The notes under the pieces: generated by a model
Databases searched by the model: none
The model's input: only the letters and a program-made list of their open reading frames with translations
What the model was told of the DNA's origin: nothing
In this document: piece after piece, positions 27,701-51,700 of the stretch
How positions within the stretch are numbered: position 1 is the stretch's first letter
How the letters are laid out: each line of letters opens with the position of its first letter
From: Bispira polyomma
Lineage: Eukaryota
Reading direction: 5' to 3'
DNA length: 64,000 bases
NCBI GenBank assembly: GCA_965649765.1
Contig: OZ287751.1
Coordinates: 43,834,001 to 43,898,000 of the forward strand
Program-made: the position numbers and the translations under genes

Positions 27701-30700
27701 TGCAAAACTTTGTAAAACATACTAGTTTAAGGTAACTTGGTCATATAACCACCTATAATTTGCGCTTCCTGTGTACACTAACAATGGTGACGTTTTCTCA
27801 CCTGGGAGCACCTATAATTTCCGGTACACAGTTGAAGATAAAACAACAAAATGGGGCTGTTTTTCGCAAGAAATTGTATGAATTTGTTGATTATTTTATA
27901 TCACAGATGAAATAGGTAATTTTTGTGTATTTTATGTCATTTTAAGGTGTTTTTACGGATTAAAACAAAAAAACGAGTTCGCGTAACGGCCCATTCTCGC
28001 AAACGCCCACCCCCAACTTCTTTGAATTTTCGTCGTTTTCGCCCCTGGGCGCTTCCGAGAGCGGAACCGGTAGTTGTCCCAGTTTTGTAACTGTATCTTG
28101 CTATATTTAACCCAGGAGAGGAGGAATGGGAGAAGGTCTATCCAGAGGAGGACAACAACTGGGTCAATGTCACTGACCTGGACAAGGGAGAACTCTATGA
28201 ACTGGTCATTGTAGCCGTAAATGGACATGGGGAAAACACTGAAGAAACAGAGTCAAAACCAGAAGAGTTCACCCCTGGAGGGCCGATTAAAGGTGAGGCT
28301 GTGAGAGAGTTAGGATAACCAATAGAGTAAAACATGGCCATAATGGTGTTTTACCAGTGGTTTAGTGTGGTCTATATTGGTGAATCTAGGAACAATTCTA
28401 GAATTCAGTGGACACTAAACCTCAAGGATAACACCAAACCCTAATTGCAGCGATAGTAGATATGGGGACCTATCCCTAATTCTATGAAATGTAACATGCC
28501 ATAATAGATTATCTTTATTTTAAAGACTACTTTCAATATGGCCGGACCCTGTCCAATGAATCCTAATGTTTGAATGTATTCCTCTAGAAGTGTAAAGAAG
28601 GATGATAATATACAAGTGATGCTGCTTTTCGCATTTCAAACCAAAAGTGAAGGAATATGTATTTCGGCTGGAGTACACTAAATGTGTAGTATTGACTGAG
28701 TGCATGTGATATATGTGTTTCATTAGTAATACACGTGTACCCAGTCAAAAACTTTAAGATACACTTCTGTATACATGTATATCTTTACTGAATTTGAAGA
28801 AATTTAGAGGTTCTTTTGAGTTCTAGTTTGGTTTTGTGGATTTATATCATTTGAAAGTTTCCAGGGCTTGTGGTTTAACATTTTATGTTTTGGAAATATA
28901 AAAAATAGTGCAGTAGAACCTCGGCTATCCAAAGTTCTATTATCCAGATATTCTATTTTACAAGCATCTTCACTCCCCCAATGTGACATTTTCTTACTGT
29001 TTGATGAACGGCTTATTATCTCAACAAAATCTTCCTGTCTCAACAGGTTCAGATAATGGACATTTGTTAATAAAAAATATATTTAATAGAGGTTCTACTG
29101 CAGTAAACAAAGACTGGGTTTAATATTAAGTATTAATGAAAAGGATAAATATGGTAGTATCATATATAGTTCTATAATATGGTAATGTCAGATTTTAAGA
29201 TACAGCCACTTAATGCTATTTTAAGTGAATGTAAAACCTTGCACTTAGCTCCACGTTAATTAACATCTTTTTGTGCAACATTAGTAATGTTTTTGACCGG
29301 TGAGCTATTTTGAAAATGTAAAATGCCTGATCTTCTGACTGTGTGGGTATTCTCCCTCATGTTATGAAGCTCAACTGAATGCATCATATTGAAATAAAAT
29401 ACAGAAAAATGTAAAGATGGTTCAATATATATGGGGTGGTGATATTATCATGCCGTTCAAGATGTTCTTTTGAAACCTAGAACATCATTTTTAGCTTCAG
29501 ATATGAGGGATATGCATTTTTTTAACCAAGTAATTTTGTTTTGCAACGTTGAAAATAACTTCTCCATCTCCATTTTTAAAACAGTTTAACTAATAATAAT
29601 AACTTTCACCATTACTATTTGTATTATAACTGGAATGCTAAAATTTTTAACTTTTGTATTTTTTTCTCAAAATAACATATTATTTCTACTTTAGTAAAAA
29701 AATGCAAGGTATAGAGTGTGTTCTAATACATGTAAATAGGTCATGCAAGGGAACGTTTATGAAGTGACACTAATGAAACGTTTTTTACTAAAGAGAATAG
29801 AATATAAGAGCATATAGATGAAATATTAAGTGAGTCATATTACAGTTCTCTGAGTATTGTCCAGACAAAATAGCCAGTGTCCATAACAGATAGCATTTGA
29901 CCATGGTAAAGAGCATTGGAGTTGTCATTTAGATTTTATATCTCAAAACTCATATTTGATGTATTGTGTACCCTAAACACTCTTGTAACTGAGGGGGCTT
30001 ATGTAGAAGAAGTAATGTATGGGCTGTTATGAGAGGTTGGTTGTAAATTTAAATTTGTAACAATATTTGTGAGTGTGTGGGTAAGAATTTTGACTTTGAA
30101 CCCTTGAAATTCTACATTTGTGGTTGACTATGGACTTCATCTGCATGTATTAAGATAAAATGTGATATTCTTAAAACAAATAGGTAGAAAATTAGTCTTC
30201 TACTAATGCATTGCATTGAAACTCTGATACTAGCCTTTTTCATTCTCAAAGTATAAAAGGCCAAGCTTTGGTAAATCCATATGAGAGTATGAGTGTTAGT
30301 TGAGAGTATGTGATGCTATTGGTTCTATGCATTGTGTGGTCTTGTATCCAGGTGGTCCCATGTCAACAGAAGGGCCAATCATTGGAGAGCGAGTAGGTGG
30401 GTGACACACAGAGCCCCTGCTAATGATATAAACACCTGCTGTATATATATATATATACAAATAACTTCTATTATACCCTCCTCTCTTACACAATACTCTA
30501 ACATCACCCTGGCTTGTAATAACATCATCCATGTTCACATAGTGTTCTCTTTGTTAATTAAAACACTGGAGTTGGGTGCTTTGGTTAGAGGTGATTTCCT
30601 GATCTTGCTTGATTGAAATTAACCATAAAATTAGCACGCCACACTGATGTCTGTGATTAGGTTTCACAAATTTTTTTTACAACATTTACGGATGTCCTGC

Positions 30701-33700
30701 CTTAGAATTCATTGGTATGAAGATCAAGTGTCATAATAGTGTAAATGAAAATCAAATAGAATTGTTAAAATTTGTCATCCATGTTACACAAGACTTCAAC
30801 CAAAGTTTTCTTTGTATTTTGAGGTAAAAACATTGTAAAGCATTCCTGTTGTTTAGAGATGAACTTGACTTTACAGCAACAAACCGGTTTTCTGATGATC
30901 CAGTAAACTAAAAATACCATCTTATTCTGCAGAGCTCTTTTTGAACATAAAAGGCATTGATTGTGCCGAACATTAACATCAATCAATGTCACATTAACTT
31001 GTTTGTTTGACAGTTGTTAATACCCTGTTGTGAATATATTTTACACCACTAAAAATGCTTTACAGTTATAAAAACCAAATGCTTCTATATACAACACATC
31101 CCTTGTTTTTGACTTTAAGCTTATTTTGCTACATGTTAAAGAATGCAGCTAGCCATGCAGTTAATTGTTATTACATTGTTAATCTGTGTAATCCATGATT
31201 TATGTACATATTCTAATAGGAGAAACGGGTGATGATTTAGGTGGTAAGTATGGCATCTGAAATTTGGAGACTGATACTGAATGATTCATACTGAGTACTT
31301 ACTTTGAGCTTTACTCATCACTTTCACTCGTTACTTTTAATACTAAATGATTCATACTAAGTACTTACTATGAGCTTTACTGCTCACTTTCACTCATTAC
31401 TTTTAATACTGAATGATTCATACTGGGTACTTACTGTGAGCTTTACTGCTCACTTTCACTTATTACTTTTAATACTGACTGATTCATACTGAGTACTTAC
31501 TTTGAGCTTTACTCATCACTTTCACTCATTACTTTTAATACTGAATGATTTATACTGAGTACTTACTATGAGCTTTACTTATCACTTTCACTCGTTACTT
31601 TTAATACTGAATGATTCATATTGAGTACTTATTGTGAGCTTTACTCATCACTTTCACTCATTACTTTTAATACTGAATGATTTATACTGAGTACTTACTA
31701 TGAGCTTTACTTATCACTTTCACTCATTACTTTTAATACTGAATGATTCATATTGAGTACTTATTGTGAGCTTTACTCATCACTTTCACTCATTACTTTT
31801 AATACTAAATGATTCATACTAAGTACTTACTATGAGCTTTACTGCTCACTTTCACTCATTACTTTTAATACTGAATGATTCATACTGAGTACTTACTTTG
31901 AGCTTTACTCATCACTTTCACTCATTACTTTTAATACTGAATGATTTATACTGAGTACTTACTATGAGCTTTACTTATCACTTTCACTCATTACTTTTAA
32001 TACTGAATGATTCATATTGAGTACTTATTGTGAGCTTTACTCATCACTTTCACTCATTACTTTTAATACTGAATGATTCATATTGAGTACTTATTGTGAG
32101 CTTTACTTATCACTTTCACTCATTACTTTTAATACTGAATGATTTATACTGAGTACTTACTATGAGCTTTACTTATCACTTTCACTCATTACTTTTATTA
32201 CTGAATGATTCATATTGAGTACTTACTTTGAGCTTTACTCATCACTTTCACTCATTACTTTTAATACTGAATGATTTATACTGAGTACTTATTGTGAGCT
32301 TTACTCATCACTTTCACTCATTACTTTTAATACTGAATGATTCATATTGAGTACTTATTGTGAGCTTTACTCATCACTTTCATTCATTACTTTTAATACT
32401 GAATGATTTATACTGAGTACTTACTATGAGCTTTACTTATCACTTTCACTCATTACTTTTAATACTGAATGATTCATATTGAGTACTTATTGTGAGCTTT
32501 ACTCATCACTTTCACTCATTACTTTTAATACTGAATGATTCATAATGAGTACTTATTGTGAGCTTTACTCATCACTTTCACTCATTACTTTTAATACTGA
32601 ATAATTTATACTGTATCTTGTCAGAGCTTTACTCCTCACCCTCACTCATTACTTTTATTATAATGTTTAAACTCGAGTATAAATTTAGATGCTTTATACA
32701 ACTAAAAGGATCATGAACAATTGAGTTTTGGCATACAATAAAAACCAATTAACAACAAAGTTTCACTTTCTCTCCCAATTACAGCAAAAACATCTTTATA
32801 ACAGAGCACTGATAATGCTTTGTTACCAATAGTATGTGATTATATGGCATATTGCTTAGGATATATCCTTGTGTCACATGTAAAGAAAGAAATGTAATGG
32901 TATGGCTTCTATTAAATTATAACTATAACTGGGTCAGTTACAGTTCTTTCGATAAATATCCCATTTTTGGCAAAAGTTTCCATTTTAGCTGTGACCAGCT
33001 AGGGATATATATATATATGAAATATAGCATGATGCTAAATCTACATGTACACATTCTCACTAGGTAAACACAGTTCCAACCAATTGCTTTGCAATGCTTA
33101 GCTAAATGACTACAATAGCCACAATGTCTCCATTAATAACCAGTTTTTGCCAGTTTCAGAGGTTTGTATTTCTCTAATACACATTTCTATCTATGTTTTA
33201 TATACATATTATACATTGTCTTTGTGTTCTTATCTCTCTCTCTCTCTCTGACACCTGTCACACCCAGTATATCAAGGTGAGACTGCATCCCATGACTTGC
33301 CTTCTGTGCTTCAGTCCGGCACTAGCTCCACTGCAAGCCATTTTACGTTTAGGCACTCACCTCCGCTCTCTTTTGTGCAGACTGTAAAGTTTACACAACC
33401 GCATGTTACAAAAGCTATTGCCATTGATGTCGGGAGTACATCGCAAGATTTACCGCCCAAAGCCAGCTTTGTCAGTGTCGCTAAATCAGCTGAAGTACAA
33501 ACAGAAACTTTTGAAAACCTCAAAAACCTATTAAGTTCCACTGTTGATTTAAAATATGAAGGTCTTCATAGTACTTTGGCAAGTACTAAGGAGATAAATG
33601 AGCTTACTGTTGGCAGCAGTGCTGGAAGGATTGACACCACAATCAGAGATATGAAAACTAGCTGGAAGAGGTGGGATTCTCAGGTGATCAGTAACAGCAA

Positions 33701-36700
33701 AGAGTTCAGCAAAAGTAGTGGCAAAACTGTTGAGATTAATACTTTGCAATTGAACAACACTACAGCTGTGAGTGAACAAGAGAAGATTAATAATACAGAG
33801 AATACAGCTATAACAAGAGATAGTAATTGGGGGAGCAAAGATTACTCCAGTAGTAGTAATAGACTGATTGATAATACAGAGAAAACAGCTATAACAAGAG
33901 ATAGTAATTGGGAGAACAAAGATTACTCCAGTACTAGTAATGGACTGATTGATAAAACAGACAATACAGCCATAACAAAATATAGTAATTGGGAGAGCAA
34001 AGATTACTCCAGTAGTAGTAATGGACTGATTGATAATACAGAGAAAACAGCTATAACAAGAGATAGTAATTGGGAGAACAAAGATTACTCCAGTACTAGT
34101 AATGGACTGATTGATAATACAGATAACACAGCCATAACAAAAGATAGTAATTGGGAGAGCAAAGATTACTCCAGTAGTAGTAATGGACTGATTGATAATA
34201 CAGATAACACAGCCATAACAAAATATAGTAATTGGGGGAGCAAAGATTACTTCATTTCTAGTAATGGACTGATTGAAAATACAGATAACACAGCCATAAC
34301 AAAAGATAGTAATTGGGAGAACAAAGAGTACTCCAGTACTAGTAATGGACTGATTGATAAAACAGACAATACAGCCATAACAAAAGATAGTAATTGGGAG
34401 AACAAAGATTACTCCAGTAGTAGTAATGGACTGATTGATAATACAGAGAAAACAGCTATAACAAGAGATAGTAATTGGGAGAACAAAGATTACTCCAGTA
34501 CTAGTAATGGACTGATTGATAAAACAGACAATACAGCCATAACAAAATATAGTAATTGGGAGAGCAAAGATTACTCCAGTAGTAGTAATGGACTGATTGA
34601 TAATACAGAGAAAACAGCTATAACAAGAGATAGTAATTGGGAGAACAAAGATTACTCCAGTACTAGTAATGGACTGATTGATAAAACAGACAATACAGCC
34701 ATAACAAAAGATAGTAATTGGGAGAACAAAGATTACTCCAGTAGTAGTAATGGACTGATTGATAAAACAGACAATACAGCCATAACAAAAGATAGAATTT
34801 GGGAGAACAAACAATACTCTAGTAGTAGTAATGGACTGATTGAAGATGCAGTTAAAACTAAGAAGAATACTTTTGAGACAGCTGATAGTATAGTCAAAAC
34901 TACTGAGACAGAATGGGGAGGGAAGAACTTTACTGTTAGTAATAAAGATCACAAGAGTAGAATTAATACTATGGAAACAATGGAGATGATAAATAACTCA
35001 ACTGGATCTAATCAAGATAGAGGGACAGATGATACACCTCAAACTATAGAAGGTATTCTGGGCTTCAAAGATTCAGCAGTTACCACCAGTGAAGGAGCAA
35101 TCGATGGTAAAACAAACACCATGTGGGAAAAGAATGAGTCCATCATAAGAAGCCGTAGTAAAGGGATTAATAGTACAGCCAAATATAACCAAAGAACTTT
35201 GGCAATGGATAAGTCTACTGCTCATAGTAATGACAGAGTAACCAGTCATATCGTGAGAACTATGAGAAGTGCTGTTACTACTAGTGAGACAAATAAAAGT
35301 TCAGCTAAAACTTTAGACAGTAGTACTTCCATTAATAACATGAGCATAAATTCTAATAGCAACAATGCCAGCACAACAACTTTAACTATGGAACCAATTA
35401 AGAGTAACCACTCATTAGCTACAGATATTAAAGGCACTAAAGACAGCACAGATGTTACTGATAAAAGTATATTTAGTATAAGAAAGCGTAATACAAAGTC
35501 TCAAATGTTTAATGCAGATGATACTACTACTGTTAACACTGGTATTATGACTAATGATAGGACTACTGACTCGAATACGGAAAGTTTAGCAATATACCAG
35601 ACTGGTTATAAAACAACTGATGATCTCACAACTGACGGGGAGTTTAGTGGTTTAGAAGTAACAGGCCATTCTAGTAATAGTAAATTTAACAGAATGACCG
35701 ACATAACTACTAATAGCCATGATGAATTACATGAAACTACTTACTCTGCACCAAAAAACAGTTTTAATTACAATACAGATATGCATGATGACAAAGTAAC
35801 TCTCTCCACCAGTGATGTAAAAGAAAGTTTTAACCCTGTGCTTCATTTAAGCACAAATGTGGACAATATGAAAGTGGAACAATCTGCAATGCCATCAGAT
35901 CACAGTAGCGGGGGTAATATAAGAACTGGTAGTACTAGTAAGAGTACCACTAAGGGTATGTGGTCTTATAATGATAGACTAGAAACATTGGCAGAAGGTG
36001 ACACTGTGAAAATAGACAGTGATAACACTGGTGTAACATCCACTTTAGAAACTTTGAATTCAGATGTCAGTACTGGTTTTTCGAAGATCCCAAACATTGC
36101 CACTATGGTAAGAGATACTGATGAGCTACACGTTTTTACAAGTGGAAATCTAAAGCCTACTCTGGAGTTTCTGACATTGGAGAATGATGATATTTTAGGT
36201 GAAAATATGCCGGGTGAATTATCCAGTGAAAGTACTGAGAAAACTACAAACTCAGAAGAAGACACATTTACTACCGAGATGGCTAGTAAGGGCAATAATT
36301 CCATAGTAAAAACAGTAGGGAATGTTAAGGTCATTACAAAAGATGCAACAGAACCTTCTATAATAATACCTAGTTCTTTACATGATGATCAGACTACAGA
36401 TATTACTAAGAAATTTGGTAGGTATGATTTTATGGTCAAAGATGACACTTCTACTGGTTCTGTGGATATGTCTGACAGTACTGAAGGTTTAAATAAAGAT
36501 ACAGATTTGGTTAGAAAAGTGGGTATTGTCAGTGCTAAAACTGATACGACTTCTGCCAGTATGGAAACAGTAAGAGGGAGCACTAAATCCATGCACAGAG
36601 GTAATTTGGATGGTCAAATGTATGGTATCAGTAATATTCCAAATAGGCAGATAAAAACAACAAATACTTACGCAGCAGATGCATTTCAAAGCAAACTCAG

Positions 36701-39700
36701 TGACTCTACTGACATCCCTAAATCAGATAGTGCTGCCTTATTGGCTGATGGAAATACTAGATTCCAAACTGGTGATACCACAAAAAGTTACTTATTTCAT
36801 AAAAGTACTGAAACCACTAAGGAGTTGAGTACAAGTGTGGACTCTGTTGTACCTAATGGTGATGCAGAGACAAGTACAATGTCTGCTAAAGTGTATTACA
36901 ACAATGTCAAATCAAGTGAAGGTACAGAACCAGTAGCAACAAGTGAAACTATAAATAGCTGGTCTGGTAAGAGTAGTAACAGTATCATAACATTGGGTGG
37001 AACCAGTAATTCCGTATCAGAAGATTACATTGTCACTACCAGTTTCATTGTAAGTACTGATGCCAAAGAACCACTTGACTCTGATGGAGAAGTTACTTAT
37101 AGTGGTGCTGTTATCCAACCTCGTAGTACACCAAGGTTTAGTAGAAATACAGAGGCTAAATTATCACATGCTACTCTTGAACCAGCCACTTCTACTAATA
37201 ATATCTTAATGGCACGGGCATCTCAGAGTACTGACCACTTTATGACCAATGAACATATCAATAGTGGAAGTATGACAAGTATTAGCAAAGGAAAGGATGA
37301 TGCTATACGTGGTACAATTACTGTGAGTATGATGTCAGTAGTCCCAGATGGTACTGACATTACAGTAAGTAGTGGTATCAATACAGTTGATACTAATATC
37401 AAGAGTACTGGTATAAGTACTACAAACACTAATATTAGCACTATGAACCTAGGTGATATTGATGTTACAGAAAGTGATGGTATCAATACAGTTAATACTG
37501 ATTTCAAAAGTACTGATATAAGTACTGGAAACAATGATATCAGCACTATTGTCCCAGGTAATATTGATGTTACAGGAAGTAGTATTATCAATATAGTTGA
37601 TACTGATATCAGGAGTACTGATATAAGTACTGGAGACACTGATATGACCACTATAGACCTAGGTGATATTGATGTTACAGAAAGTATTGGTATCAATACT
37701 GTTCGTAGTGATTTCAGGAGTGCTGGTATAAGTACTGAAAACACTGATATCACCACTAGGAACCTAGATGGTATTGATGGTTTGGAAAGTAGTGGTATCA
37801 ATACAGTTGATACTGATATCAGGAGTACTGTTAAAAGTACTGTAAACACTGCCATGGAAGCAAGTGATATTGATATCAGCACTATTGACGTAGGTAATGT
37901 TGAGGTTGGAAATACAGATACTATTATTACAGAAAGAGGTAATACTAAAATAGGTGTTATGACTATTGAAAGCACTGAGATGACTGCAGTGAAAGCTGTT
38001 GATACCACAGGGACTGTTGATATTGAAAGCCCTGAAACTGGTACTACAGAAACTGATAGTAGAAGTTTCGATGTCAGTACTACTAAAAGTGGCTATATTG
38101 ATGCTAGAGATACAATGGGTAGAAAAACAGAAAACATGGATATTAATCTTAAAAGTACTGAGGGTATAGAATCTGGTAGAGTTTTAACGAGAATAACAAC
38201 AGAACAAACTGCTGGTGTTGATATTGGAAGTACAAATATTAGAGACAGAGATGGCATCCATATAACAACAGCTTCTGGTATCACAAAAACTGGTAGTGGC
38301 TATGATCAAAGTACTTTCTTTAGTGATTCTACAGTAGCAGTGAAATCTGCAATTGCAGATAGTGTTAGTATTGATGGTTTAATTGGTGGGAGTGCTATTA
38401 TTAGCAAAAGTGGAACATCTACCTCCAGTGCAGGAAGTAACACAGAATATATACTGACTAACCATATTGGTGATATGGTTACTGAAGATAATCTAAATCC
38501 AACAGTAAATACTTACCACAGGGTAGGAGATAGTGCTGATCATACAAACAGTGAGGTCATAAATTATATGACTACTGGAGATACTGTGAGAATAAGCAAT
38601 GGTACTGAAATTACAGGTACATTTAATACAAGTACAAAAAAATCAGGTTCAAATATTAGAAATGATACTATTCTTCAGGATTTGATTCAAAGCGTAGATC
38701 TAATGAGTACCAGTGCATCTGTTGATACAATAGGTGACATGAGTGGCAGCTTTACAACTGGAAGAACTAATGAGTTATTGCGAAATATTGATGTCACAGT
38801 TGGAGAAGATTCTACAAAAGTAGACATTGATATCACTCGTGATAGAACATCTGGTCTAATTGACAAGTTACAAGAAAGTACTTATTCCATGACAGCAAGG
38901 TATAGAAGTAAAACAGACACTAAGATCACTGAAACCATGAGTCAGTTTGGTACAAGCACTATCTCTATGGTAACAAATAATGCTGCCAGTAGAGGCATGG
39001 ACACCAAAACTGACAGAACGGGTTGGACAGTAAATGATGCTACTAAATCTTTGGTAACAGGTGGTACTGTCAATACAGTTGGTGACATTCATCACAATAG
39101 TACAGATATTGAATACACTGAAAATGCTACTACTTGGTGGCTAGAAGACCTAGATTTCTCAGTAGCAGGTGATAACACTGATGTATATTCTGGTACATCT
39201 GCAGGTACAACCAGGGCATTAGATGTCACTAGTGGATCTAGAAAGTCAAGTGACGTGGGTGTCACAGACATTGTTTATAGAATCAGAAATACTACCAGGG
39301 AGAGTAGCGTAATTATTACAGATGATCTGGTCACAGACAGTACTGACACTGCACCTCAAAGTGAATATCAACTGCTAGTGAGTAGTACAGATGTCATGTT
39401 AAAAGGTCATAGATTTAGTACCAATACTGACAACGCTGAAGTAACATATAGTAGTGACTCCATGGTTCTAGATACCATGCCTGCATTTGATAGTGAAGTG
39501 ACAAGTGATAGCAGACTACCAAGTGGTAGTACAGAGAGTCTAGTAGCAGGTGATACTGTCAGTACAAATACTGTTAATACAAATAGTGCAAGAGTGTACA
39601 CTGATATATTAACAACGACAAGCCTGACTGATGATTACACAGTTACCAAATCTACAGAAGTAACAGTCACTGACAGAGTCACATCAGCAAGTTCTTTATT

Positions 39701-42700
39701 AGTACATGACACTGTAACTGTAAAAGATCTGGACATAAGCAATAGTGTAAGTGATGATTTAGGGAAATTGTCAACAAAGAACCATACAACAATACCTCAT
39801 GTTGTTTTAACAGTTTCTACTGAATCAGATAAATCAAAAGTGAGTAATAACAACTTAATTGATGCCACTGAAGACCCCCAAAATGTCACCTGGGTCCTGA
39901 TGTGTGAGAAACTGATGTCATTGAGAGCTCAATTGTTTGCACTAAGCAATAGAGTTTGTGGGCAGACTGGGGATGTATCTGATAGAAACTGTTCAGAGAC
40001 AACATCAGTAGATAGTGTCAATGTGAGTGCCTCAGAAAGCATCGTAAAACAAACAGGTTATGTGCTTCAGATTATACATACTGAACAACCCATGGCCACT
40101 GGTGAAATGACTGATGATACTACAATACATCATGGAATAGAAGATGATAGAAACCTAACAGCGGATGGGGTGTTTGAGGCTAGTACTGATATCATTTCTA
40201 ACTATGTCACTAGTGCTTTAGACACAAAAAGCGATATCGATATTTCTAGTCCTACATTTTCTGACAATTATATCAATGAAGCAACAGAAATCGAATACAG
40301 CACCCCAGTTTCTAGTCCTGAATTTGAAGATAGTTCTTTTACTGTAGAAACTGAAATCAGTCGAAGTACTACTGGTAAGTTAGATGAAACCCCAGTTGGT
40401 GTTTCTCTAGTTGAAAGGGGCGATACAGCCATTGCTGATTCTATTTTTAGAATTGGACCGCTTATTGTTACTACCACAGATCTTGGGGATACGACTGACA
40501 TTGCTACTTCTGAGGTAGGGGACAGCTTTGTGTCATTATCTAACAAAGATATATACAACACAATAACTGTCAACAGAGATACTAATCTCATTACTGCAAC
40601 ACCAGTGGTAAGAGACAAACCTAAAATAATTACTGCTGATGTAGGAGACAACTCAGTGACTATGACTTTAACCAACCCTAGCACAACAAAATATGAGGAC
40701 AGTCCTCTTAGTGAAACTCAAAATGTAGAGGAAGGACTAAGTACCATACATACCAACTTAAAAGTCAAGCACATGTCTACTGCTATAAATTTAAGCAATA
40801 TTACGGAGTCTTTTTCCCCCAGACTAGAAAACACGTACCAGACCACAAGCCCAAAGTTACAGAACAACACAATCAGTACTGACATAGCCTTAGAAAACAG
40901 TTCATTGGACAACTGGTTTGAATTAAACTCAACAACAATTTCTAAGGCACAAAATGATTCTGCCAATGTTACTTTGTATTTGAAAGACCATTATGTCACA
41001 AGTTCTTTGCTAGAAACCATCAGTGTCAAATCAGGAAACTATGATACTTCTACAGTTCCTCAGGAAGGACACTCGTACATCACAGCTTCTGAAAAGAAAA
41101 CAGTGGATGTCAAAAAAAGTTCAACAAATACGGAAATAAATGCTGGATCTCCTTACTCCAGTCCTGGAACAAGACAGCACACAGTTGTTGAGTCTAAAAT
41201 AGTGCATTATTTAACATCTGTTGGAGCTCAAGTAGAAAACGTCACCACTGAAAGTATAGACTCAGAAAATAAAACCATCAGTCCATTACATTGGGAGAAC
41301 AACATAACTACTATAAGTCCACAGTCAGGGGACAATATCACAGTGATAACCTTTCTTGTAGAACAAAACCTCACCACAATTATGACACAATTAGAAAATA
41401 GCTTTGCTGCTATTGCTGTAGAGTTGAAAGAAAGGTTTGCTGACATGTCATCTCAGTTAAATGATAATTTCACCACCATCACTTCAAACTTAAAGGATAA
41501 TTTCACAGCTATATCCTCACATTTAGAGGACAATCTAACACCTATCTCAGTGTATTTAGAGAAAAGCTTTTCCAATATAACATCACAGTTAGCGGATAAC
41601 TTTGCCACTATTATATCACAGGTACAGAAAACCTATGTCAATAATAATTTACAGCCAGAAGACATTTTTACCACTGTTTCATCAAACGTAGATGTCTTGG
41701 TTGTCATTAGTTCGTTTTTAGAAGACAACTTTGTTAATATCACATCTCAGTTGGAGAACAACTTCACAACAGTAATGTCACAACTAGGTACAAACCTTAC
41801 AGTGGTCAGATCTGAGTCATATGACAGCCAAGGAGTTACCGCATTAGTGGACACAGTTACAAACGCTATACCATCAAGTTCACAGGACATCTTTGTTGAT
41901 TCAGATTCAAACAATACCACTACATCCGCGGAGAATATAGTATCAAGTGGTGCATTGACCTTAGAGCAGACAAAGCCAAAGGCTAATGATTCTACCCTTG
42001 ATTATACATTATCAAGTATAATTCAAGAATCAGCTACTACCAATGATGGATCTACCGTTGAAATTGATTATATATCAAACAGGAAAAGCCCTAAACTACT
42101 AAACAACATCTTTACGCCAATTTATGACAAGTCAGAGTATAACTCTGCAGACCTTATGTCAACTTCACAAACATTTAGAAGTCATACTGCTGGCTCAAAT
42201 TCAGCAATACATATTAGCAAAAATGAAACACCGGAACCATTGTCATCTGTTACACCAGAGGCTCTTGGTAATAACAAATTTGAAAAGCAGACCACAAGTG
42301 CAATACCAGAAAGTGAAAGTACTGAGCACAATAAACTAAGAACTATTTCTTTGAGTAGTACATCACTGGGGAAAGAATATCCTATAAATAATATATCACT
42401 TGTGAGTAGTAAGACTGAGGACAAATTCAATGATTTTCAAACTGTATATACAAATTACTCTGATTACTCAGACAATACTGTTGCTGTAAGAGTCAACACG
42501 ACAGAAAGTTACAAGTCTAGTACATTTATTTCAACTGAATCCTCCAGCAAAAGTTTTTTGACACCAGATGCTGAAATATTCAGTCCAATGGATCAAAGGA
42601 ATATTTCTTTTGAAGGTGAAACATCTACCTTTCAGACAAACAGTAATAGAAACATTGCATCCAATATAACAACTAGTTACAATTCTACTAAAAGTTCAGA

Positions 42701-45700
42701 CATTAGCCAGAATGTCACATATAAACCCTCTACTGCTCCTGTGACAAAAACCTCTGATCGCAAATCTGCCTTGGGTAGTGTATTTACCATGTCATTTGAT
42801 GATAATGATCAAGCAACAAGTGTAGCCTATGTAAAAGAAAGCAGTGACAAGTGGAAGACACCAATGGATGATCAGAGTGCTAAAACTATGTCCAAAACCA
42901 GTTTACCTCCAATGAGTCAAACCATGGAAGGGAAGTTTCAAAGTACTCACTCTGTCAGTGGTACAGAAATTCCATCCGCAAGGTCATCAGGGAGCAACAC
43001 AAGCCCTGCTCCCATCGTGGCTGTTCATATTATTAAAGAAATACATGATCAAAAAGTGACAGGAGCAAATATGGTTAGATTAGTGGACACGCAGGCTTAT
43101 CCTACTAGAAATGGGATAGATTCCTCTACTGATGACTACAAAAATACATCTTATAAGACTGACAGTGGAAGTTCAACAGAACATGAAACTACTGTTATTG
43201 ATAGAGATGTCTTTAAAACTACAGAGAATTTAGAAACGGTAACAAGCAGACTGATTGAGAATTCAGGTGTTGATGCCAAAATTACTGCAACATACAAAAC
43301 CAGTGCAGATAAATTCAGATTAACTTATCAAGAAAACAGCATATCTGCTGAACAAAGTGTAACTGGATATATTGGGGAAAACGCAAGCTCAAACATGCCT
43401 GTAACTGTGTTGAATATTTCAAAAAGGTTGGACTTATCTGATGACAGCTTTTCCAATTCAACTAGAACAGTACTTGACAGTGCAGATGATGATGTACATG
43501 TGAATTCACCCACAGGTCATATCCTTTTCTCAGAACCTACCAGTTTGCAAACATCTAGGTCTACAGGCACATTAGACTTCAGTTTTGAGAATAAGTCCTC
43601 CATGGAACCTATGAATACTTCATTTCTTGATGTGAAAACTAACAGCTCAAGTGTTAGTGAACCACTCATTATTACAACGTCTTCAAATCCTAACAGCACG
43701 ATAAATCACATTGATTCAGAGTGGAAAAATCAACGAGGTAATGACAATACAGAAAAGTACAGTACTCTTCAGCAGTTGCTTTCAACATCATCAGTAGTAT
43801 CACAGGCCACTGAAGATGTTTTGGACTTAAAGATTTCTAAAATAGTTAATACAGAGGGAACAGTATTAGATCATTCTCCTGGAGAGACTTTAAAAAAGAA
43901 CCCAGATTCTCCGCCGTCATCTACAATAGAATATTTGTCAGCTTTAGTATCTTCTTCTACATCTATGTCCCAATCCACTGAAGATATTTTGTATGCAAAC
44001 AATATGAACACCACAGAAACTACTGAATTGTTGGAGTCTTCTTCAGCGGAATCTACAATACATGGAAAATCACATTCTTCTCCAATGACTGACCATATGA
44101 ATTCCCCAAAGTCAGTGGAAGCTACATCTGCATTATATCCTTCAAAATATGCATCAAAGAATACAGAAGAGTCCTCTGAAGCAGAAACTACAGGACTTGA
44201 TAGTTTGCCTGCAATTTCATCTCTATCTAGTGCATCAGACTCTCAGTACTTGTCTCAAAAGACAGTTGACAACAACAATGTTGTGACATCAGCTTTACCG
44301 AGAAAGGTAACGTCAAATGTTCCTTCTAAAGTTAAAACTTACATGGATACACAGCATATGGTAGATGACACAACAACTTTCTCAGTGGATCCTACAACAA
44401 AAGGATTCAAGCTCCTTGAAAAGAAATTCCTGTCAAACATGGGTGAAGCAGCTCTTTCAACTTTATCTACTATATTTACTACACAAATCACTGACATGGA
44501 TATGGCAGAAACAGGTGTAAACTCTCAAGAAAACATCTCCACAGTTTCCTCCATAAACGAAACATTCATGGGAGGAAACCTACTTCAGAAATTAAAAGAT
44601 CTTAGTAATAATACCAAAGTGAACCAAAGTAATATACACAGTGTGTCGACAGCTGTTCCTATAAGTGACTCAAATTCAAAGCAAAAGTCTGCACACATCT
44701 TACAGGTTTGTATAGACAGGTATAAACAGAGGAAGCGATTTGAACAACGAAAACAGAAATCCGCAGAAAAGGTCACTCAAAAATGGTTGTCTTTACCAAA
44801 TGTGTTATCAGTACAAACTACGACCGTGTCTTATGATCATACTGAAGAGGATTCCACAGAACATGCAGCTGTTCATGTGCTGGTTGATACCATGGACCAA
44901 AACCTGGATGGTAATAGCTTTCTCAGACCCTGCACATAAACTCAGCACCAGAATATATGTAAAGCATGGGCTGGTATGCTCGAAATAGTGCACTCGTGTT
45001 TAAACTTCATACTCAACTTAAATATAGGCCATGTGGAAATCCTTGTACATTGAAATGACCTGTACTTGTGACCATTCGTTTTAATAGAGCTTTTAACACT
45101 GACTTCAAATATCAAGTCAGGTTTTAGTTATGTTTACCCATGTGTCCATGATTCCAGATTTAAGTAAGAATTTTAGTCGAGTATACCTTCGAGAATACAG
45201 CCCTAGATGTTCACCAAACATATGAATAGTACACACATTGGGCATGATCTTATGTCAAGGCTTGTGTATGTAATTAAGTATCGACTCTCTGTCTTTTATA
45301 TTTAAAATTAAATTACACCCGGGGATTTTTCCTCTGAACAAAATGGCCACTAATGTCAAATAGTGCACACTTATATAAAGTATTGAAAACAACCACATAT
45401 GTATACGTATAACTGTTGGGGTGTAATTTAAATAGGTTAGAGCCCTTTGTATGTGTTCTCTTTGAAAATAGAACACAGTTAATGACTCAGTCTCTTCAGA
45501 ATGTTGGTAACTGTACTCTATTGTCAAAGGGAGACCACTAACATGGACCCTAACTTATACTTAGTATAGCATTTTTATAGATGCAAATTTTATTACTTGC
45601 ATGAATCAAGGTTTTCGACCAGGGCATGTCATTATAATAATCTTGCTCATTACTTATATCAATGTGGATAATGTCAGCACAGTAATATAATAAAAAATAG

Positions 45701-48700
45701 GTTTTTGTATGTTTTGGAAATAAAATAACATAACACATCATTTTTTCTTCTTCTGAAATGAACAGCACTTCTCTTTAAAACATTGACATAACTATTTTTC
45801 ACGAGTGAAATTATGGCATGTGCAACACCGTAGATTAGATAATATAAAACATTAATTTCAGGGATGTACAAAATGAACAGCACTGAATATGTATGATGAA
45901 TTCTGAGAAGGTTTTCTGAGAACATCCAAAATATCAAGAAATAATCATATTTTTATATTGTGAAAGCACTTTCAAGTAAAAATCTGGAACTAACTTTTGG
46001 ATTGTGTGGAAAGTAGTAGGGTAAAGGGAAAAAATTGGGTAAACTAAATGTAACTGTGTGGTGATTGATGGTGAAAGCTGTTCACTAATAATGACACCTG
46101 TATTGAAACTGAATATAATAATGTTTAACGAGTTGCTTCTAATATTACAAGCAGATACAGATACAAAATGTAGTTGGTCCCACAAACAAAGGGGGCTTTT
46201 AACCAGCTTTCCTTGTGCCTTAATTGCTTTGAATAACAATAGTCTGCATTTTTTCTGTTGGTTTTCTTAATTTATTTGCTTTATTCTATTAAACCAAAGA
46301 TGCTGTGTTTCTTTAATTTCGCATTTAAGTATTTTTTCTTTGGGTTATGTCTTGTATCAGTATGTTAGTGATATGTATTCAAAACAGGTCTAAAAAGAGG
46401 TAAGTCCTATAGTTACTAAGACATCTTCTAATCTTACATAAGTAATGTATTAATTATATTCCAGAAGATTAAAATTTCTTAAACTTATAATGTGTTAGAA
46501 ATAGGTCACAGTATTATTTGTATTCATAGTTAAATTTACTCTCTGTGCATTTATCTACCTTTGTCTGGTATTCAAAGTACTGATTCACTTTATTGTCGCT
46601 GCTAAAAGATGGCCAACTAGCACCAGTAACTGCCATTCCCCTAACTGTACCAGGAAATGCTTGGGCTAGGGTTGAACCCAAGTCTTCTGCATTTCTAATT
46701 AAGTGTGTTGCCCATTACGCCACATTGGCATAGTTTTCTCATCTCTTATTTACAGTTTGCATTGGGTTTTAACGATATGATGATTTAAGACAAAATTTAA
46801 TGTCAATTTTCTTTATGGGCTGATTTGAGTTTTGAAAATATAATCATTAAAATTCTAAACTTCATGCAAACTTTGTGTTGTGTCTGTATAGTTCATTGTT
46901 TTGTAATTCACTTAAAGTTATAGGGAATCCGTGAGATTGTTGTGTAAACCAGCTGTCTTAACCTGTTTGGCCTTGTTATATATCAATTTACTGCATTGGT
47001 CAATGTTTACAGACAAATCCCAGGATAATAAACAAATAAAAATAGCCTGGTTTGGTGACTTTTTGACCTTTAAACCTCCACATTGTGGTCTGTGAAAATT
47101 GTGGAGACTTGTATATTGTTAGACAAGTCCAAGTTTGAAGACTTTTGTGTTGATGGTTTTGTTATTATGTTATAGTCTATAATTTTTAAAGGTATTTTTT
47201 ATATAAACATATTAGTATACTTATTCTACTCTGCTTAACCTTACATCCATTAAATAGTGCTAGTCAAATTTCAAGAGCTGCCATTCTATGAATATTTTCA
47301 TCTTTTTAAAAGTAATAAATTTTATTACATAGTTATATTATTTAGACCAAGAGTCCACCAATGAGGATCAAGTTAAAGATGTATAATTTCAGAGACAACA
47401 TTAAGCTTGTGTTTTTTATACACACAACCTCAACATACATAACCATTTTGTCTCTGTTGTCAGAATGGAGTAAAGAAGTAAAATATCCATTTGGACAATA
47501 AAAATGTTATGCAATATTAATAAGAAATGTATTATGTTCATATGATATCAAACTCTAGGGACTATAAGCTTTGGGTTAGACGTCTAAAAGTAAATCAAAT
47601 TCACAGAAAACATATCTTTTACCTCTTGTATCTAGATTAAAACCAATCTACAGATATTTCTATTGTATGGCCTTCTTAAAAGCAGTAATTTGCTTTTTGC
47701 ATGGCTCAGACAAATATACAAATGCTAAGGTGTTTTTTAAAAAGACCCTTGTTGGTTTGTTGATGTAGCTATATATTTAAAAGACAAAACCCAGGCAACA
47801 CTTGATAAACAAGTGTCAGTATCTGAGAACTGCTTACATTGGACATCTGGATATACAACAGCTCAACACCTTCATCATGGACACATCATGAATATTAATA
47901 CAAGTCGACTAATACTCACTTTACTAGCCCATATATTATTTTAAAAGATTGATACTTTGCATATTACAAATACTTATTGAAGGTAACATATGTAATAGAT
48001 TTCTAGATATATATAGTTGGTACTTTGCATCTGTATAAAGCACTAGTGTTCTTACTTTATGGTTTAGACTGATCTCGAAGTAATCTAGTTTAAGGTTACC
48101 TCTTAAATTGAGCATTATCTCCTCTATTCAACTGTTTCTTTTAATGGTGGATGAAAAAGAAACCCATCATCTGAACCAAACTTAATTACATTTAATTGTC
48201 ATTATTAAAAACCTGTTATAAAAGGAAATAATTAATTCTTTGAACAACAAAACTGGTGGTTTTGATCCCAGTCTCAGTTGTTTAAAAATGCAACCTTTGT
48301 AGTTAACAACAATATGGGCAGCTAAGTGTGAGTTTAAGGTTAGTAGGGTGACTACATACAGTGTAGTGTGTGAGTAGCCATCACCCTCTGTAGTATTAGA
48401 AGATGCTAGCAGTCCATTAACACTGTGTTTGTAGGAGATCCTTATCTCTGGTCAGTTTACATTAGCAGTTTCCCTACCAGCTTTGTGTATCTTTTTACCA
48501 GTTTGTCCATTCTTTATAGTGCAAAGGAAACCTTACTGTATTCCACCCAGTAGTAACCGCTCAGTAGCAAACACTACTTTGGGAGTTTTCTGGTATTTTT
48601 AAGCAATGAATATTATGTTCAAAACATACTATTCTGTTTCCAGTAATAAAACTTTGTCTTATGTGTTAAAATAGTTGTTCCCTACTATTAAGTATTACAC

Positions 48701-51700
48701 AAATTAACCCACAAAAATCTAAATTTATTACAATCATATAAGTGGACATTTTCATAATTACACAAGAAATATAAACTGTTAAGACCTTATTAGATAAATG
48801 ATTATAAGCTACATGTAAAATTAGAAGTATGTATTCTATACAAGTTGTAACTTATATTTTCCCCACAAAATAAGGAAAATCTTAAAGAGCCCAAGTGCTC
48901 AATTCTGTGGAATATGGTAATTTAGCCTTTAGTAGTAGGTCAGCCCTTACTGTATCTTAGCAGTGTGATACAGTTGTTAATCCATAGATTCCTGCATTAA
49001 GTGTGATTAGTAAAATCTACTTCTAGCTTATTTATCAGAATTGCCACTATTAGTGCTATTTCTTCTAACTTCTGTGTATTTAAGAAGTTAAATATTCACT
49101 CACTGAACTGACAACTATTGGACTATTTAGGATTTATATTGACATTTAGAAAGTGGAGGAATTGATCGGTTCACTAATCTTTATCACCAGAATGATCAAT
49201 GAGATTGATATGTACACAGTACAGTCAGGTGATGATGATATATCTGCCGAAGTCACAAGCACTGACATAACATATTCTTCATTTGCTTCAAATGTGTATC
49301 AGAGACACAGCACAGTAGCGTCTTCGGTGGATCTAATTGCTAATGAAGAGACATTTGACATTACTAATGACTTTACCATTATGATCTCTGACAAGGGACC
49401 ATACAGTCCTCCAGTATATGGTCGGACCAGTTCGACCCTGCCCAGTGTTGTTGATGATGAGTTTGATAACACTGGTAAGGTAACAGGGAGTAGTTCTGAT
49501 GTTGATTTCAGTGGGAATATGGTTAATATGTTTGCAGGACCCACTAAAACCCACCTGGCCTCAGCGGGATGGTTTATAGCTCTGATGTGTGCCATCATCT
49601 TCTTACTTCTCATCTTGTTGATTGTATGCCTGATTAGGAGGAACAGAGGGGGCAAGTATCCAGGTCAGTCACAAACCTAGTTGTGTACCATCGGGAATTC
49701 AACTATTTCCGGCCTGTCTCATATTTTTGGCCTATAATGCTTTTATTATTTTATATAAAGCTTAAATTATTGGTAAAGTGAAGATAAAATTAATGTTTTC
49801 TGTATTTTCTATAAAAAAAACAATGGCTGGTGAGCTATGTCATTTTATTACTTGGTCATGATAAGAGGCCAAAAATACGGTGAAATTTTGAAACAAGACT
49901 TTTAGCATTTTAAATTGTTCTATACTGTAATTGTATCCAATCTGAAATGTTTAAAACAGCTTAAAAAACAATAGTATTATGATACAAGTACAGTAGAACC
50001 TCTATTTTACTGTCATCTTGGGAGAGTGAGAATTTGTTTAGATAATAAAAGGTCGTAAAATAGAAGTGGCATTTTGGTATAAAACAATAGCAAAAAAAAA
50101 AGGTTTGGGAGAATAAAATTAAGTTTGTAAAATCGAATCTTCGGATAAGAGAGGGTCGGATAGTAGAGGTTCTACTGTATACACTATTAAAATGATTATT
50201 TTTTTATAGAAGCTGTGTCATTGCTTTCTAAAGATGTAATTATCTTGGGTTGTAAATGTCTATGGACTAAATTAATTGTTAAAACGTTCTTTTTTTGTTT
50301 CGTTACAAAAGTTTAAAAAAATTGTGGTCCCATGTGACCTGTTGGTTATAGGATGTTGATCTGGTGATCAGGAGGTCTCTGGTTAAAGATTCTACTTGAC
50401 TTTTAGAATTATAATCAAATTATGTTAACAAGAGGATGTATTTGTATGTATATAATGATTACTCAGTGTGTTTGTGAAGCCTGTTAATTTCCCTTTTATG
50501 TGGAAAAACCTTTAACCTCACAAAGGCCTTTTCTTTCAAACTTGACCTTGTTTTGGTAAAAATCCTGTTTTAGTAGAGGTACTTCCCTAAACCGTCAAGA
50601 TTCGACTTAAAGAAGTTCAACGGTAGTTATAGACATCAGTAAGGTTAGAAGCAGCTTGAGTTAATATGTGTATTTTGTAAAATAGATCATAAGTTTATTA
50701 TACAAGTAAATCTCTGTCTATAGGTTTGAATCAATAGATTCTTTATAGTATTTGCCACTTGTTTTTTTCCATTGTACTACACATGGTTGAGGACAATTTT
50801 TGAACATAGGACAATTCTGGACAAAATTTAAAAAACTACTGCAACAAAAAAAGAATTAGAAAGAAATGATCATTGATAATCAGGTAAATACTTTTCCACT
50901 AGTTCTCCTTTTTATATTTGATTTTTGAAGCTTGTGTGCTATAGCTTCCAGAATTGCCTTATGTCCAGAATTGCCCTCACGGGTAGAGTATTTTAGTAGA
51001 TGTATAAAAACCGCTGATATGAGTAATGCTTTAAGGTTTGAACATGCCTTTCCATGTGTTTTCAGTGTATGAGAAGGAGAAGCTGCGTGGTAAGAACCCA
51101 GAGGATGAAGAGGAGAACTTTGGGGAGTACAACAACAAACAGTGAGTGTTTTATGTATAAAAAGATTGATTGGCAAGTAGGCAAAATCAAAATGATTAAA
51201 TGAAGCCTTTTCACAGGAAGAATTATGTTCAAAATCATTCCTCTGCCATGATTAATCTACCTCAGGTTATTTTAGGAAAGAATAAGAATACCTAGATTAT
51301 GATGTAATCTCATTTTGTTAGTGCTAATATTAATGGTCAGATGTATTACAAGTTAAAAAGCTATTCACCTGGGATAGAGGGGGAGGCGAAGTACCACTAT
51401 TAGAAAGCTTAGTCCATGGCAGTATTATCTGTCTACAGTAGATATGGTAGATTCTGTACAAGTTAAATGTCTAGCATCCTTTGGATTTAATTCTACTTAA
51501 TCTGCCTAAACTTAACATTTACTTAGTCAAACAGTAAAATTTGGATAACAATTGCTTAATTTGTAGTAAAATTTTACTAGAACTCGATGTACTTATACAA
51601 AGTCTACCATATTGACTGAGAAGAAAGAATTAGTTGACTATTGTACACAGATAATGAAATATACAGATTACTTTGAATTAATTTTGAAAGCTATATTGCA

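What the first reader, a model, noticed from the sequence alone, without database searches (positions are those of the whole stretch)
33233..33300. One acceptor, two donors: a 9-nt microexon versus an 11,643-nt exon
Seen: after a (TC)n tract, the acceptor at 33267 is followed 9 nt later by a good donor (AAG|gtgaga). Using it adds VYQ. Ignoring it reads GGT GAG ACT GCA TCC CAT GAC in frame into the giant ORF. Established: UC-rich tracts upstream promote neural microexon inclusion in vertebrates (SRSF11/SRRM4 pathway). Inference: a single 5' splice-site choice toggles a 3-aa versus 3,881-aa insert, and the giant exon may have arisen by extension of the microexon.
Basis: partly seen in the sequence, partly recalled or inferred. 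Interest (0 to 1): 0.8.

Follow-up and report, generated by a model that had tools for sequence, protein, structure and literature searches.

The report
Microexon-or-giant-stalk switch in worm neuroglian
In a worm's nerve-cell adhesion gene (L1/neuroglian), one splice acceptor can apparently open either a 3-residue microexon or a 3,881-residue floppy, sugar-coated stalk; the DNA signals for both are good, but no RNA could be read to show that both forms are made.

Summary
The gene is an L1/neuroglian-family adhesion molecule. Between its last FnIII exon and its membrane exon, acceptor 33267 is followed after 9 nt by a strong in-phase donor (adds VYQ). Ignoring that donor opens a stop-free S/T/D/N-rich frame up to a second donor at 44910 (11,643 nt, 3,881 aa), with a stop 9 codons later. 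Acceptor, near donor (chance about 0.5%) and both ends of the giant exon are supported by sequence statistics. Three relatives' transcripts carry neither insert, and no homologue of the giant exon was found. The acceptor shows three of four invertebrate eMIC-microexon marks (long AG-free zone, UCUC tract, CUAAY branch point; no UGC), and the genome encodes an eMIC-like Srrm234. The design is known: mouse Ptprz1 exon 12 (one acceptor, short, long and secreted forms) and EJC-repressed microexons at the start of longer exons. New are the scale (about 1,300-fold) and the L1 host. 'A single toggle' oversimplifies: skipping, internal donors, three more cassettes and a second stalk exist. Neural specificity and evolutionary direction are untested. 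Other first-reader notes on this window list the same giant exon; no note from other DNA matched.

The parts
28116..28292 (+). Last FnIII exon of the L1/neuroglian-like gene; ends in a phase-1 donor
   Evidence: Pfam fn3 and DSCAM-C Fn3 hits; tblastn to relatives' transcripts
30352..30396 (+). Candidate 45-nt phase-1 cassette exon
   Evidence: acceptor and donor both in the top 1% of intronic sites; no RNA proof
31220..31243 (+). Candidate 24-nt phase-1 cassette exon
   Evidence: donor top 0.3%, AG-free zone 57 nt; no RNA proof
33162..33265 (+). 104-nt AG-free zone with CTAAT branch-point motif (33174-33178, A at -90), (TC)8 tract (33233-33248) and CTGAC motif (33248-33252, A at -16); no TGC
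33266..33267 (+). Shared acceptor AG (phase 1)
   Evidence: codon-model change point and in-frame stop 6 codons upstream
33268..33276 (+). Candidate 9-nt microexon (adds V-Y-Q)
33277..33282 (+). Proximal donor gtgaga; read through it encodes the start of the giant stalk
   Evidence: score 9.7 on the gene's own donor model, top 0.2%; chance 0.5%
33268..44910 (+). Giant exon, 11,643 nt, 3,881 aa, about 421 kDa unglycosylated; 29% Ser+Thr, 14% Asp+Glu, 5 Cys, no membrane segment, no Pfam domain; contains a 27-aa x13 repeat (33785-34843), a 35-aa x4.7 repeat (37360-37851) and an 11-residue hydrophobic periodicity near residues 2690-2900
44911..44939 (+). Distal donor gtaata (44911) and, if read through, 8 more codons and a TAA stop (44937-44939): possible secreted form
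   Evidence: gtaata is also used by two constitutive exons (15515, 19282); the 8 codons after it score lower than 99.97% of ORF windows on a codon model
46388..46399 (+). Candidate 12-nt phase-1 cassette exon
   Evidence: best donor score in the interval, 12.4; no RNA proof
49220..49537 (+). Open, acidic S/T-rich 5' extension of the membrane exon (second, about 105-aa stalk); phase-1 acceptors at 49219 and 49228; 49220-49228 repeats the acceptor + 9 nt + donor layout
   Evidence: alignable to relative L003 (score 69 vs 37+-7 shuffled); similar open extensions in five relatives
49538..49663 (+). Membrane-spanning exon, short acceptor at 49537
   Evidence: homologues; same acceptor position in five relatives and in transcripts L028, L030, L031
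55321..55472 (+). Cytoplasmic exon with the L1-family ankyrin-binding region
   Evidence: Bravo_FIGEY 39.5 bits, above the cut-off

Best explanation
This is an alternatively spliced juxtamembrane linker of an invertebrate L1/neuroglian gene, built like Ptprz1 exon 12. The default mRNA joins the last FnIII exon (28292) to the membrane exon (49538). When acceptor 33267 is used, the outcome depends on the donor: 33276 leaves a 9-nt microexon (VYQ, a normal-sized adhesion receptor), 44910 keeps an 11,643-nt exon that puts a 3,881-aa, largely unfolded, probably O- and N-glycosylated stalk between the Ig/FnIII head and the membrane; running on to the stop at 44937 would give a secreted form. Shown: the sites, the frame, the coding character and both ends of the giant ORF, its composition. 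Inferred: that both donors are used; that the giant form arises when the upstream intron is removed first and the exon junction complex laid on the new junction hides the donor 9 nt away (as in PMC6224609), while the micro form arises when an eMIC/Srrm234-type factor defines the tiny exon early, likely in neurons; and that the stalk acts as a spacer or anti-adhesive coat.
For: Acceptor features; donor strength and position, P about 0.005; ORF begins 5 codons before the acceptor and codon usage switches there and again at 44910; all neighbours are phase 1; three further in-phase cassettes with strong donors in the same interval; acidic S/T stalks next to the membrane exon recur in relatives; Srrm234 with an eMIC-like tail in the genome; precedents PMC11215419, PMC6224609, 10.1101/2021.02.24.432780.
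Against: No RNA reads. Transcripts of three relatives have no insert at this junction. No homologue of the giant ORF (limited searches) and none in the five related genomic loci that span or flank this intron or in the C11 paralogue. No UGC. In HeLa only 5.3% of 545 such near-acceptor donors responded even to EJC loss. The distal donor is modest (4.5; chance about 0.12 in the last 11 codons). N-glycosylation sequons and Ser-Gly pairs are not enriched over shuffles.
Confidence: 0.55

Rival explanations
1. Only the giant exon is real; the donor at 33276 is a cryptic internal donor, kept silent by its closeness to the acceptor and by the exon junction complex. The long pyrimidine tract and AG-free zone serve the giant exon. 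VYQ transcripts are absent or noise.
For: Described class: 545 human exons hold a donor within 15 nt of their start and most are silent. No UGC. Equally strong in-phase donors occur deeper in the ORF at chance frequency (4 observed vs 2.3+-1.4). Relatives' transcripts lack a 3-aa insert.
Against: Position-specific chance about 0.5%; the donor is far stronger than the distal one (9.7 vs 4.5) and preserves the frame; three other in-phase mini-exons flank it.
Confidence: 0.25
2. The giant ORF is a terminal exon: the choice is between a membrane-bound micro form and a secreted giant mucin-like form ending at the stop 44937 with polyadenylation at 45.3-45.7 kb (phosphacan-like); the donor at 44910 is little used.
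For: The distal donor is modest; AATAAA/ATTAAA hexamers lie at 45307, 45689 and 45719; Ptprz1 makes such a form through a stop just past the distal donor.
Against: Codon usage falls to intron-like exactly after 44910; gtaata donors are used by two constitutive exons of this gene; 9 codons to the first stop is typical after its real donors (2-14); the hexamers are common in AT-rich DNA.
Confidence: 0.12
3. 33276 is an acceptor (AAG) that rebuilds a donor after joining to 28292, a recursive splice point; the giant ORF would be its RS-exon and no VYQ is ever added.
For: AG|GT at 33275-33278 in phase 1; joining the FnIII exon end gives AAAG|gtgaga, a strong donor; recursive sites have long pyrimidine tracts (PMC6224609, PMC8605326).
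Against: CAG at 33267 is the first AG after the tract and scores better (6.6 vs 3.9).
Confidence: 0.05
4. The giant ORF is a separate, nested single-exon gene or a repeat-derived open frame unrelated to neuroglian splicing.
For: No homologue and no domain found; the genome is rich in intronic tandem repeats.
Against: Single copy at its 5' end; only about 13% is tandem repeat; first Met is residue 129 with no signal peptide; both ORF ends coincide with in-phase splice sites of the host gene.
Confidence: 0.03

Closest known systems
Mouse Ptprz1 (RPTP-zeta/phosphacan) exon 12 / 12a / 12b (PMC11215419)
   Same: One acceptor after the FnIII domain; donors at 1,000 and 3,547 nt give short and long FnIII-to-membrane linkers; read-through meets a stop just past the distal donor and gives a secreted form.
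   Different: Different protein family. There the short form keeps 1,000 nt and the ratio is 3.5-fold; here 9 nt vs 11,643 nt (about 1,300-fold), the exon can probably be skipped, and nothing is validated by RNA.
EJC-repressed cryptic microexons hosted by longer exons (Blazquez et al. 2018, PMC6224609)
   Same: A donor within the first 15 nt of a longer exon gives a microexon from the same acceptor.
   Different: Those are mostly cryptic, seen on EJC loss in human cells, in ordinary-sized exons; here the near donor is in frame, stronger than the distal one, and heads an 11.6-kb exon.
Neurofascin NF186 mucin-like (PAT) domain (PMC2121080)
   Same: L1-family molecule with an alternatively spliced mucin-like segment near the membrane.
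   Different: NF186's segment is a short Pro/Ala/Thr-rich cassette (size from my own knowledge, tens of residues); this one has 3,881 aa, is S/T/D/N-rich with only 2.4% Pro, and shows no sequence similarity.
eMIC/SRRM3-4-dependent neural microexons, including L1-family ones such as NRCAM exons 5 and 19 (10.1101/2021.02.24.432780; 10.1101/2024.09.17.613571; PMC12456627)
   Same: 3-27 nt, in frame, long AG-free zone, UCUC-rich tract, CUAAY branch point, in an L1-family ectodomain; regulator gene present.
   Different: No UGC near the acceptor; no flanking intron in the usual sense, since the downstream sequence is itself coding; neural inclusion not tested.

Membership tests
L1/neuroglian family (host gene) | Ig domains followed by FnIII repeats | tested here: met
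   I-set/Ig_3 and fn3 hits on separate exons; exon order matches relatives' full transcripts. Ig1 lies before the window and was not fetched.
L1/neuroglian family (host gene) | Single membrane helix followed by the RNRGGKY motif and a FIG[Q/E]Y ankyrin-binding tail | tested here: met
   Membrane exon matches neuroglian/NrCAM-named proteins; Bravo_FIGEY above cut-off.
eMIC/SRRM4-type neural microexon | 3-27 nt, frame-preserving, AG...GT borders | tested here: met
   9 nt, phase 1 to phase 1.
eMIC/SRRM4-type neural microexon | Long AG-exclusion zone, UCUC-rich long pyrimidine tract, strong branch point | tested here: met
   104 nt, (TC)8, CTAAT at -90 and CTGAC at -16; features as.
eMIC/SRRM4-type neural microexon | UGC between branch point and AG | tested here: not met
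   No TGC in 33161-33267. About a quarter of human SRRM3/4 targets also lack it.
eMIC/SRRM4-type neural microexon | Regulator with an eMIC domain encoded in the genome | tested here: met
   SRRM_C hit above cut-off at C8:35482011 and the continuing exon at C8:35490407; that this is the eMIC motif rests on Pfam and my own recall.
eMIC/SRRM4-type neural microexon | Neural-enriched inclusion that depends on the regulator | not testable with these tools
eMIC/SRRM4-type neural microexon | Conservation in related species | tested here: inconclusive
   No close relative's intron available; distant relatives' transcripts show no insert.
Ptprz1-type one-acceptor, multi-donor stalk exon | Shared acceptor, in-phase near and far donors between FnIII and membrane exon, stop shortly after the far donor | tested here: met
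Ptprz1-type one-acceptor, multi-donor stalk exon | Each form found as mRNA and protein | not testable with these tools
   no RNA data
Mucin-like / proteoglycan stalk | S/T-rich, low-complexity, unfolded ectodomain segment | tested here: met
   29% S+T throughout, 5 Cys, no hydrophobic helix, 55% of windows below the FoldIndex line.
Mucin-like / proteoglycan stalk | Pro-rich PTS composition or clustered acidic Ser-Gly attachment sites | tested here: not met
   Pro 2.4%; Ser-Gly 28 vs 26+-5 shuffled, none in an acidic-pair context. It works like a mucin stalk but is not a PTS mucin.

The most novel reading that the evidence does not exclude
A regulated, neuron-versus-other-tissue choice of donor turns one L1/neuroglian receptor from a normal adhesion molecule (+3 aa) into one carried on a 420-kDa stalk (+3,881 aa): a microexon programme (eMIC) reused as the off-switch of a giant exon, with the giant exon born by in-frame extension of a microexon.
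Probability: 0.25. Interest if true: 0.75.

Novelty: new variant of a known kind. Interest (0 to 1): 0.45.

Why it matters
L1-family ectodomains set the spacing and strength of neuron-neuron and neuron-glia contacts. A 3,881-residue stalk would move the binding head far from the membrane or block adhesion, something not reported for this family in the papers searched. If the near donor is used in neurons, it would link two separately studied phenomena, neural microexons and giant exons, in one splice event, and give a natural test of how a strong donor 9 nt inside an exon is silenced over 11.6 kb. If the donor is silent, the locus is still a giant stalk exon, with an ordinary cryptic donor.

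Tried and rejected
Word search with the giant ORF: no hit, but it sees only proteins of about 2,100-6,800 aa. Atlas search with its first 540 aa: no usable hit. Two long contigs of relatives gave gene lists but no DNA. Vertebrate-type hits were not followed; no contig was taken for human. Rejected: the pyrimidine-rich acceptor at 33380 as giant entry (wrong phase); later phase-1 AGs (weak, need 46 or more open intron codons, chance about 4%); N-sequon or Ser-Gly enrichment as proof of a proteoglycan (not enriched); depletion of cryptic donors in the ORF (none against codon shuffles); a shared giant exon in the C11 paralogue (none). Paper searches found no report of a giant or microexon-linked stalk in invertebrate neuroglian.

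Full report
Host gene. The window (G000:C4:43834001-43898000 of a 1.035-Gb animal genome) holds most of an L1/neuroglian-family gene on the + strand: Ig exons, FnIII exons ending at 28292, a membrane exon at 49538-49663 and a Bravo_FIGEY exon at 55321-55472. The membrane exon finds neuroglian- and NrCAM-named proteins; its nearest relatives are unnamed contigs.

Observation. The FnIII exon ends in phase 1 at 28292. AG lies at 33266-33267, nine bases follow, then gtgaga. Using the donor adds V-Y-Q; ignoring it continues in frame for 3,889 codons to TAA at 44937-44939, which chance cannot give (log10 P about -128).

The acceptor. On a short weight matrix from the gene's own 19 acceptors the 16 bases before the AG are only average, but the wider context is exceptional: 104 nt without AG (0.5% of intronic AGs), pyrimidine fraction 0.82, higher than all 880 intronic AGs and all reference acceptors, the only (TC)6+ tract in 64 kb, and branch-point motifs at -90 (CTAAT) and -16 (CTGAC). 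The giant frame is closed by a stop 6 codons upstream, and a codon model switches from intron-like to ORF-like at this point. The next phase-1 AGs are 33276 itself and a poor one at 33414; the good-looking AG at 33380 is out of phase. So the giant ORF is almost certainly entered here.

The near donor. It scores 9.7 on the gene's own donor model, in the top 0.2% of intronic GTs, within the upper range of real donors (leave-one-out 1.3-12.2) and second of 343 in-phase GTs of the ORF. An equally good in-phase donor within 27 nt of the acceptor appears in 0.5% of codon shuffles. That is good but not decisive evidence: the model is small, and comparable donors occur deeper in the ORF (35955, 36600, 40374, 43737) at about the chance rate.

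The far donor. It scores 4.5, modest, but gtaata is used by two constitutive exons (15515, 19282), the eight codons after it score lower than 99.97% of ORF windows on the codon model (model trained on the ORF itself), and 9 codons to the first stop is typical after real donors of this gene. I take 33268-44910 as a real internal exon; a secreted read-through form remains possible.

The stalk. 3,881 aa, about 421 kDa, 29% Ser+Thr evenly spread, acidic, 5 Cys, no hydrophobic helix, no Pfam domain, with a 27-aa x13 and a 35-aa x4.7 repeat and an 11-residue periodic stretch. It is mucin-like in composition but not Pro-rich, and glycosylation motifs are not enriched over shuffles. Its 5' end is single-copy in the genome. 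No homologue was found, with the limits given under Tried and rejected.

Context. The interval is a hotspot. Three more in-phase cassettes with strong donors lie at 30352-30396, 31220-31243 and 46388-46399. The membrane exon has an open, acidic S/T-rich 5' extension of about 105 aa that aligns to a relative (score 69 vs 37+-7); five relatives have such an extension together with the same short acceptor, and transcript L031 uses the short one. At 49220-49228 the layout acceptor + 9 nt + donor + open frame occurs a second time, but there the relative L003 lacks the GT, a warning that such a layout need not be conserved. Full transcripts of three relatives join FnIII to the membrane exon with no insert. 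Genomic loci of more distant relatives have short introns or no long ORF here, and the paralogue on C11 has no long ORF. The giant exon therefore looks lineage-specific, and the base form is skipping.

Regulation. In Drosophila, eMIC-dependent exons have long AG-free zones, UCUC-rich tracts, CUAAY branch points and UGC near the acceptor (10.1101/2021.02.24.432780). This acceptor has the first three and lacks UGC; UGC is missing in about a quarter of human targets and is not strictly required (10.1101/2024.09.17.613571). The genome encodes an Srrm234 with an eMIC-like tail. For the giant form the near donor must be silenced. Blazquez et al. showed that the exon junction complex blocks donors within 15 nt of a new junction and so represses microexons hosted at the start of longer exons; 545 such cases exist in HeLa and 5.3% respond to its loss (PMC6224609). 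This gives both a mechanism (upstream intron first, donor hidden, giant exon kept; early definition by an eMIC factor, microexon kept) and the main rival (the donor is merely cryptic). These steps are inference.

Comparison. The closest design is mouse Ptprz1 exon 12: one acceptor after FnIII, donors at 1,000 and 3,547 nt, and a stop just past the far donor for the secreted form (PMC11215419). Within the L1 family, neurofascin has a spliced mucin-like segment (PMC2121080) and NRCAM has ectodomain microexons (PMC12456627). The locus works like Ptprz1 exon 12; it is not filed as an SRRM4-type microexon, since UGC is absent and neural use is untested. New are the 1,300-fold ratio, the size of the stalk and the host family; the paper searches found no such case.

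Limits. The joined spliced model was left unsearched by rule. The direction of origin cannot be told: extension of a microexon and an internal donor in an older exon both fit.

Verdict. Observation confirmed; interpretation partly supported. My estimates: giant exon real and entered at 33267, about 0.9; donor 33276 used at a meaningful level, about 0.6; neural eMIC control, about 0.3. New variant of a known kind; interest 0.45.

Noticed in passing
window 49150-49537; L003, L004, L054, L055, L056: Open acidic S/T-rich 5' extension of the membrane exon (72-182 aa) in this animal and five relatives, with a conserved short acceptor 9 codons before the GWF motif: a second, lineage-wide optional stalk made by acceptor choice.
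   Followed up: partly
window 49220-49228: Second instance of acceptor + 9 nt (VQS) + good donor + in-frame read-through; the donor is not kept in relative L003. Another strong in-phase donor lies 30 codons before the GWF motif.
   Followed up: partly
window 30352-30396, 31220-31243, 46388-46399: Three more phase-1 cassette candidates (45, 24, 12 nt) with strong donors; the 45-nt one has TGC at -24 and -38.
   Followed up: partly
window 52999-53025: 27-nt phase-2 cassette candidate in the cytoplasmic region (PYMPL), pyrimidine-rich acceptor; absent from relatives' transcripts L030, L031, L039.
   Followed up: partly
window 16149-17317 and 55431-56602: Intronic tandem arrays that begin at an exon end and copy the donor and the last codons many times (55-nt and 81-nt units).
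   Followed up: no
window about 23085-23100: Furin-type RGKR site in the third FnIII repeat, where relatives also have basic runs.
   Followed up: no
window about 41340-41970 (giant ORF residues 2690-2900): 11-residue hydrophobic periodicity (autocorrelation 0.37 at 11, 0.38 at 22): a possible amphipathic-helix or coiled-coil stretch inside the otherwise unfolded stalk.
   Followed up: no
G000:C11:55598383-55655400 (L001, L048-L053): Second L1-family paralogue without a giant ORF; one intron holds ORFs that look like reverse transcriptase and tyrosine recombinase (DIRS-like retrotransposon, about 55648000-55652500), observed only; another holds a 14-kb tandem array.
   Followed up: partly
G000:C8:35482011-35490500 (L057, L058): Srrm234 gene end with an eMIC-like motif split over two exons 8 kb apart.
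   Followed up: partly
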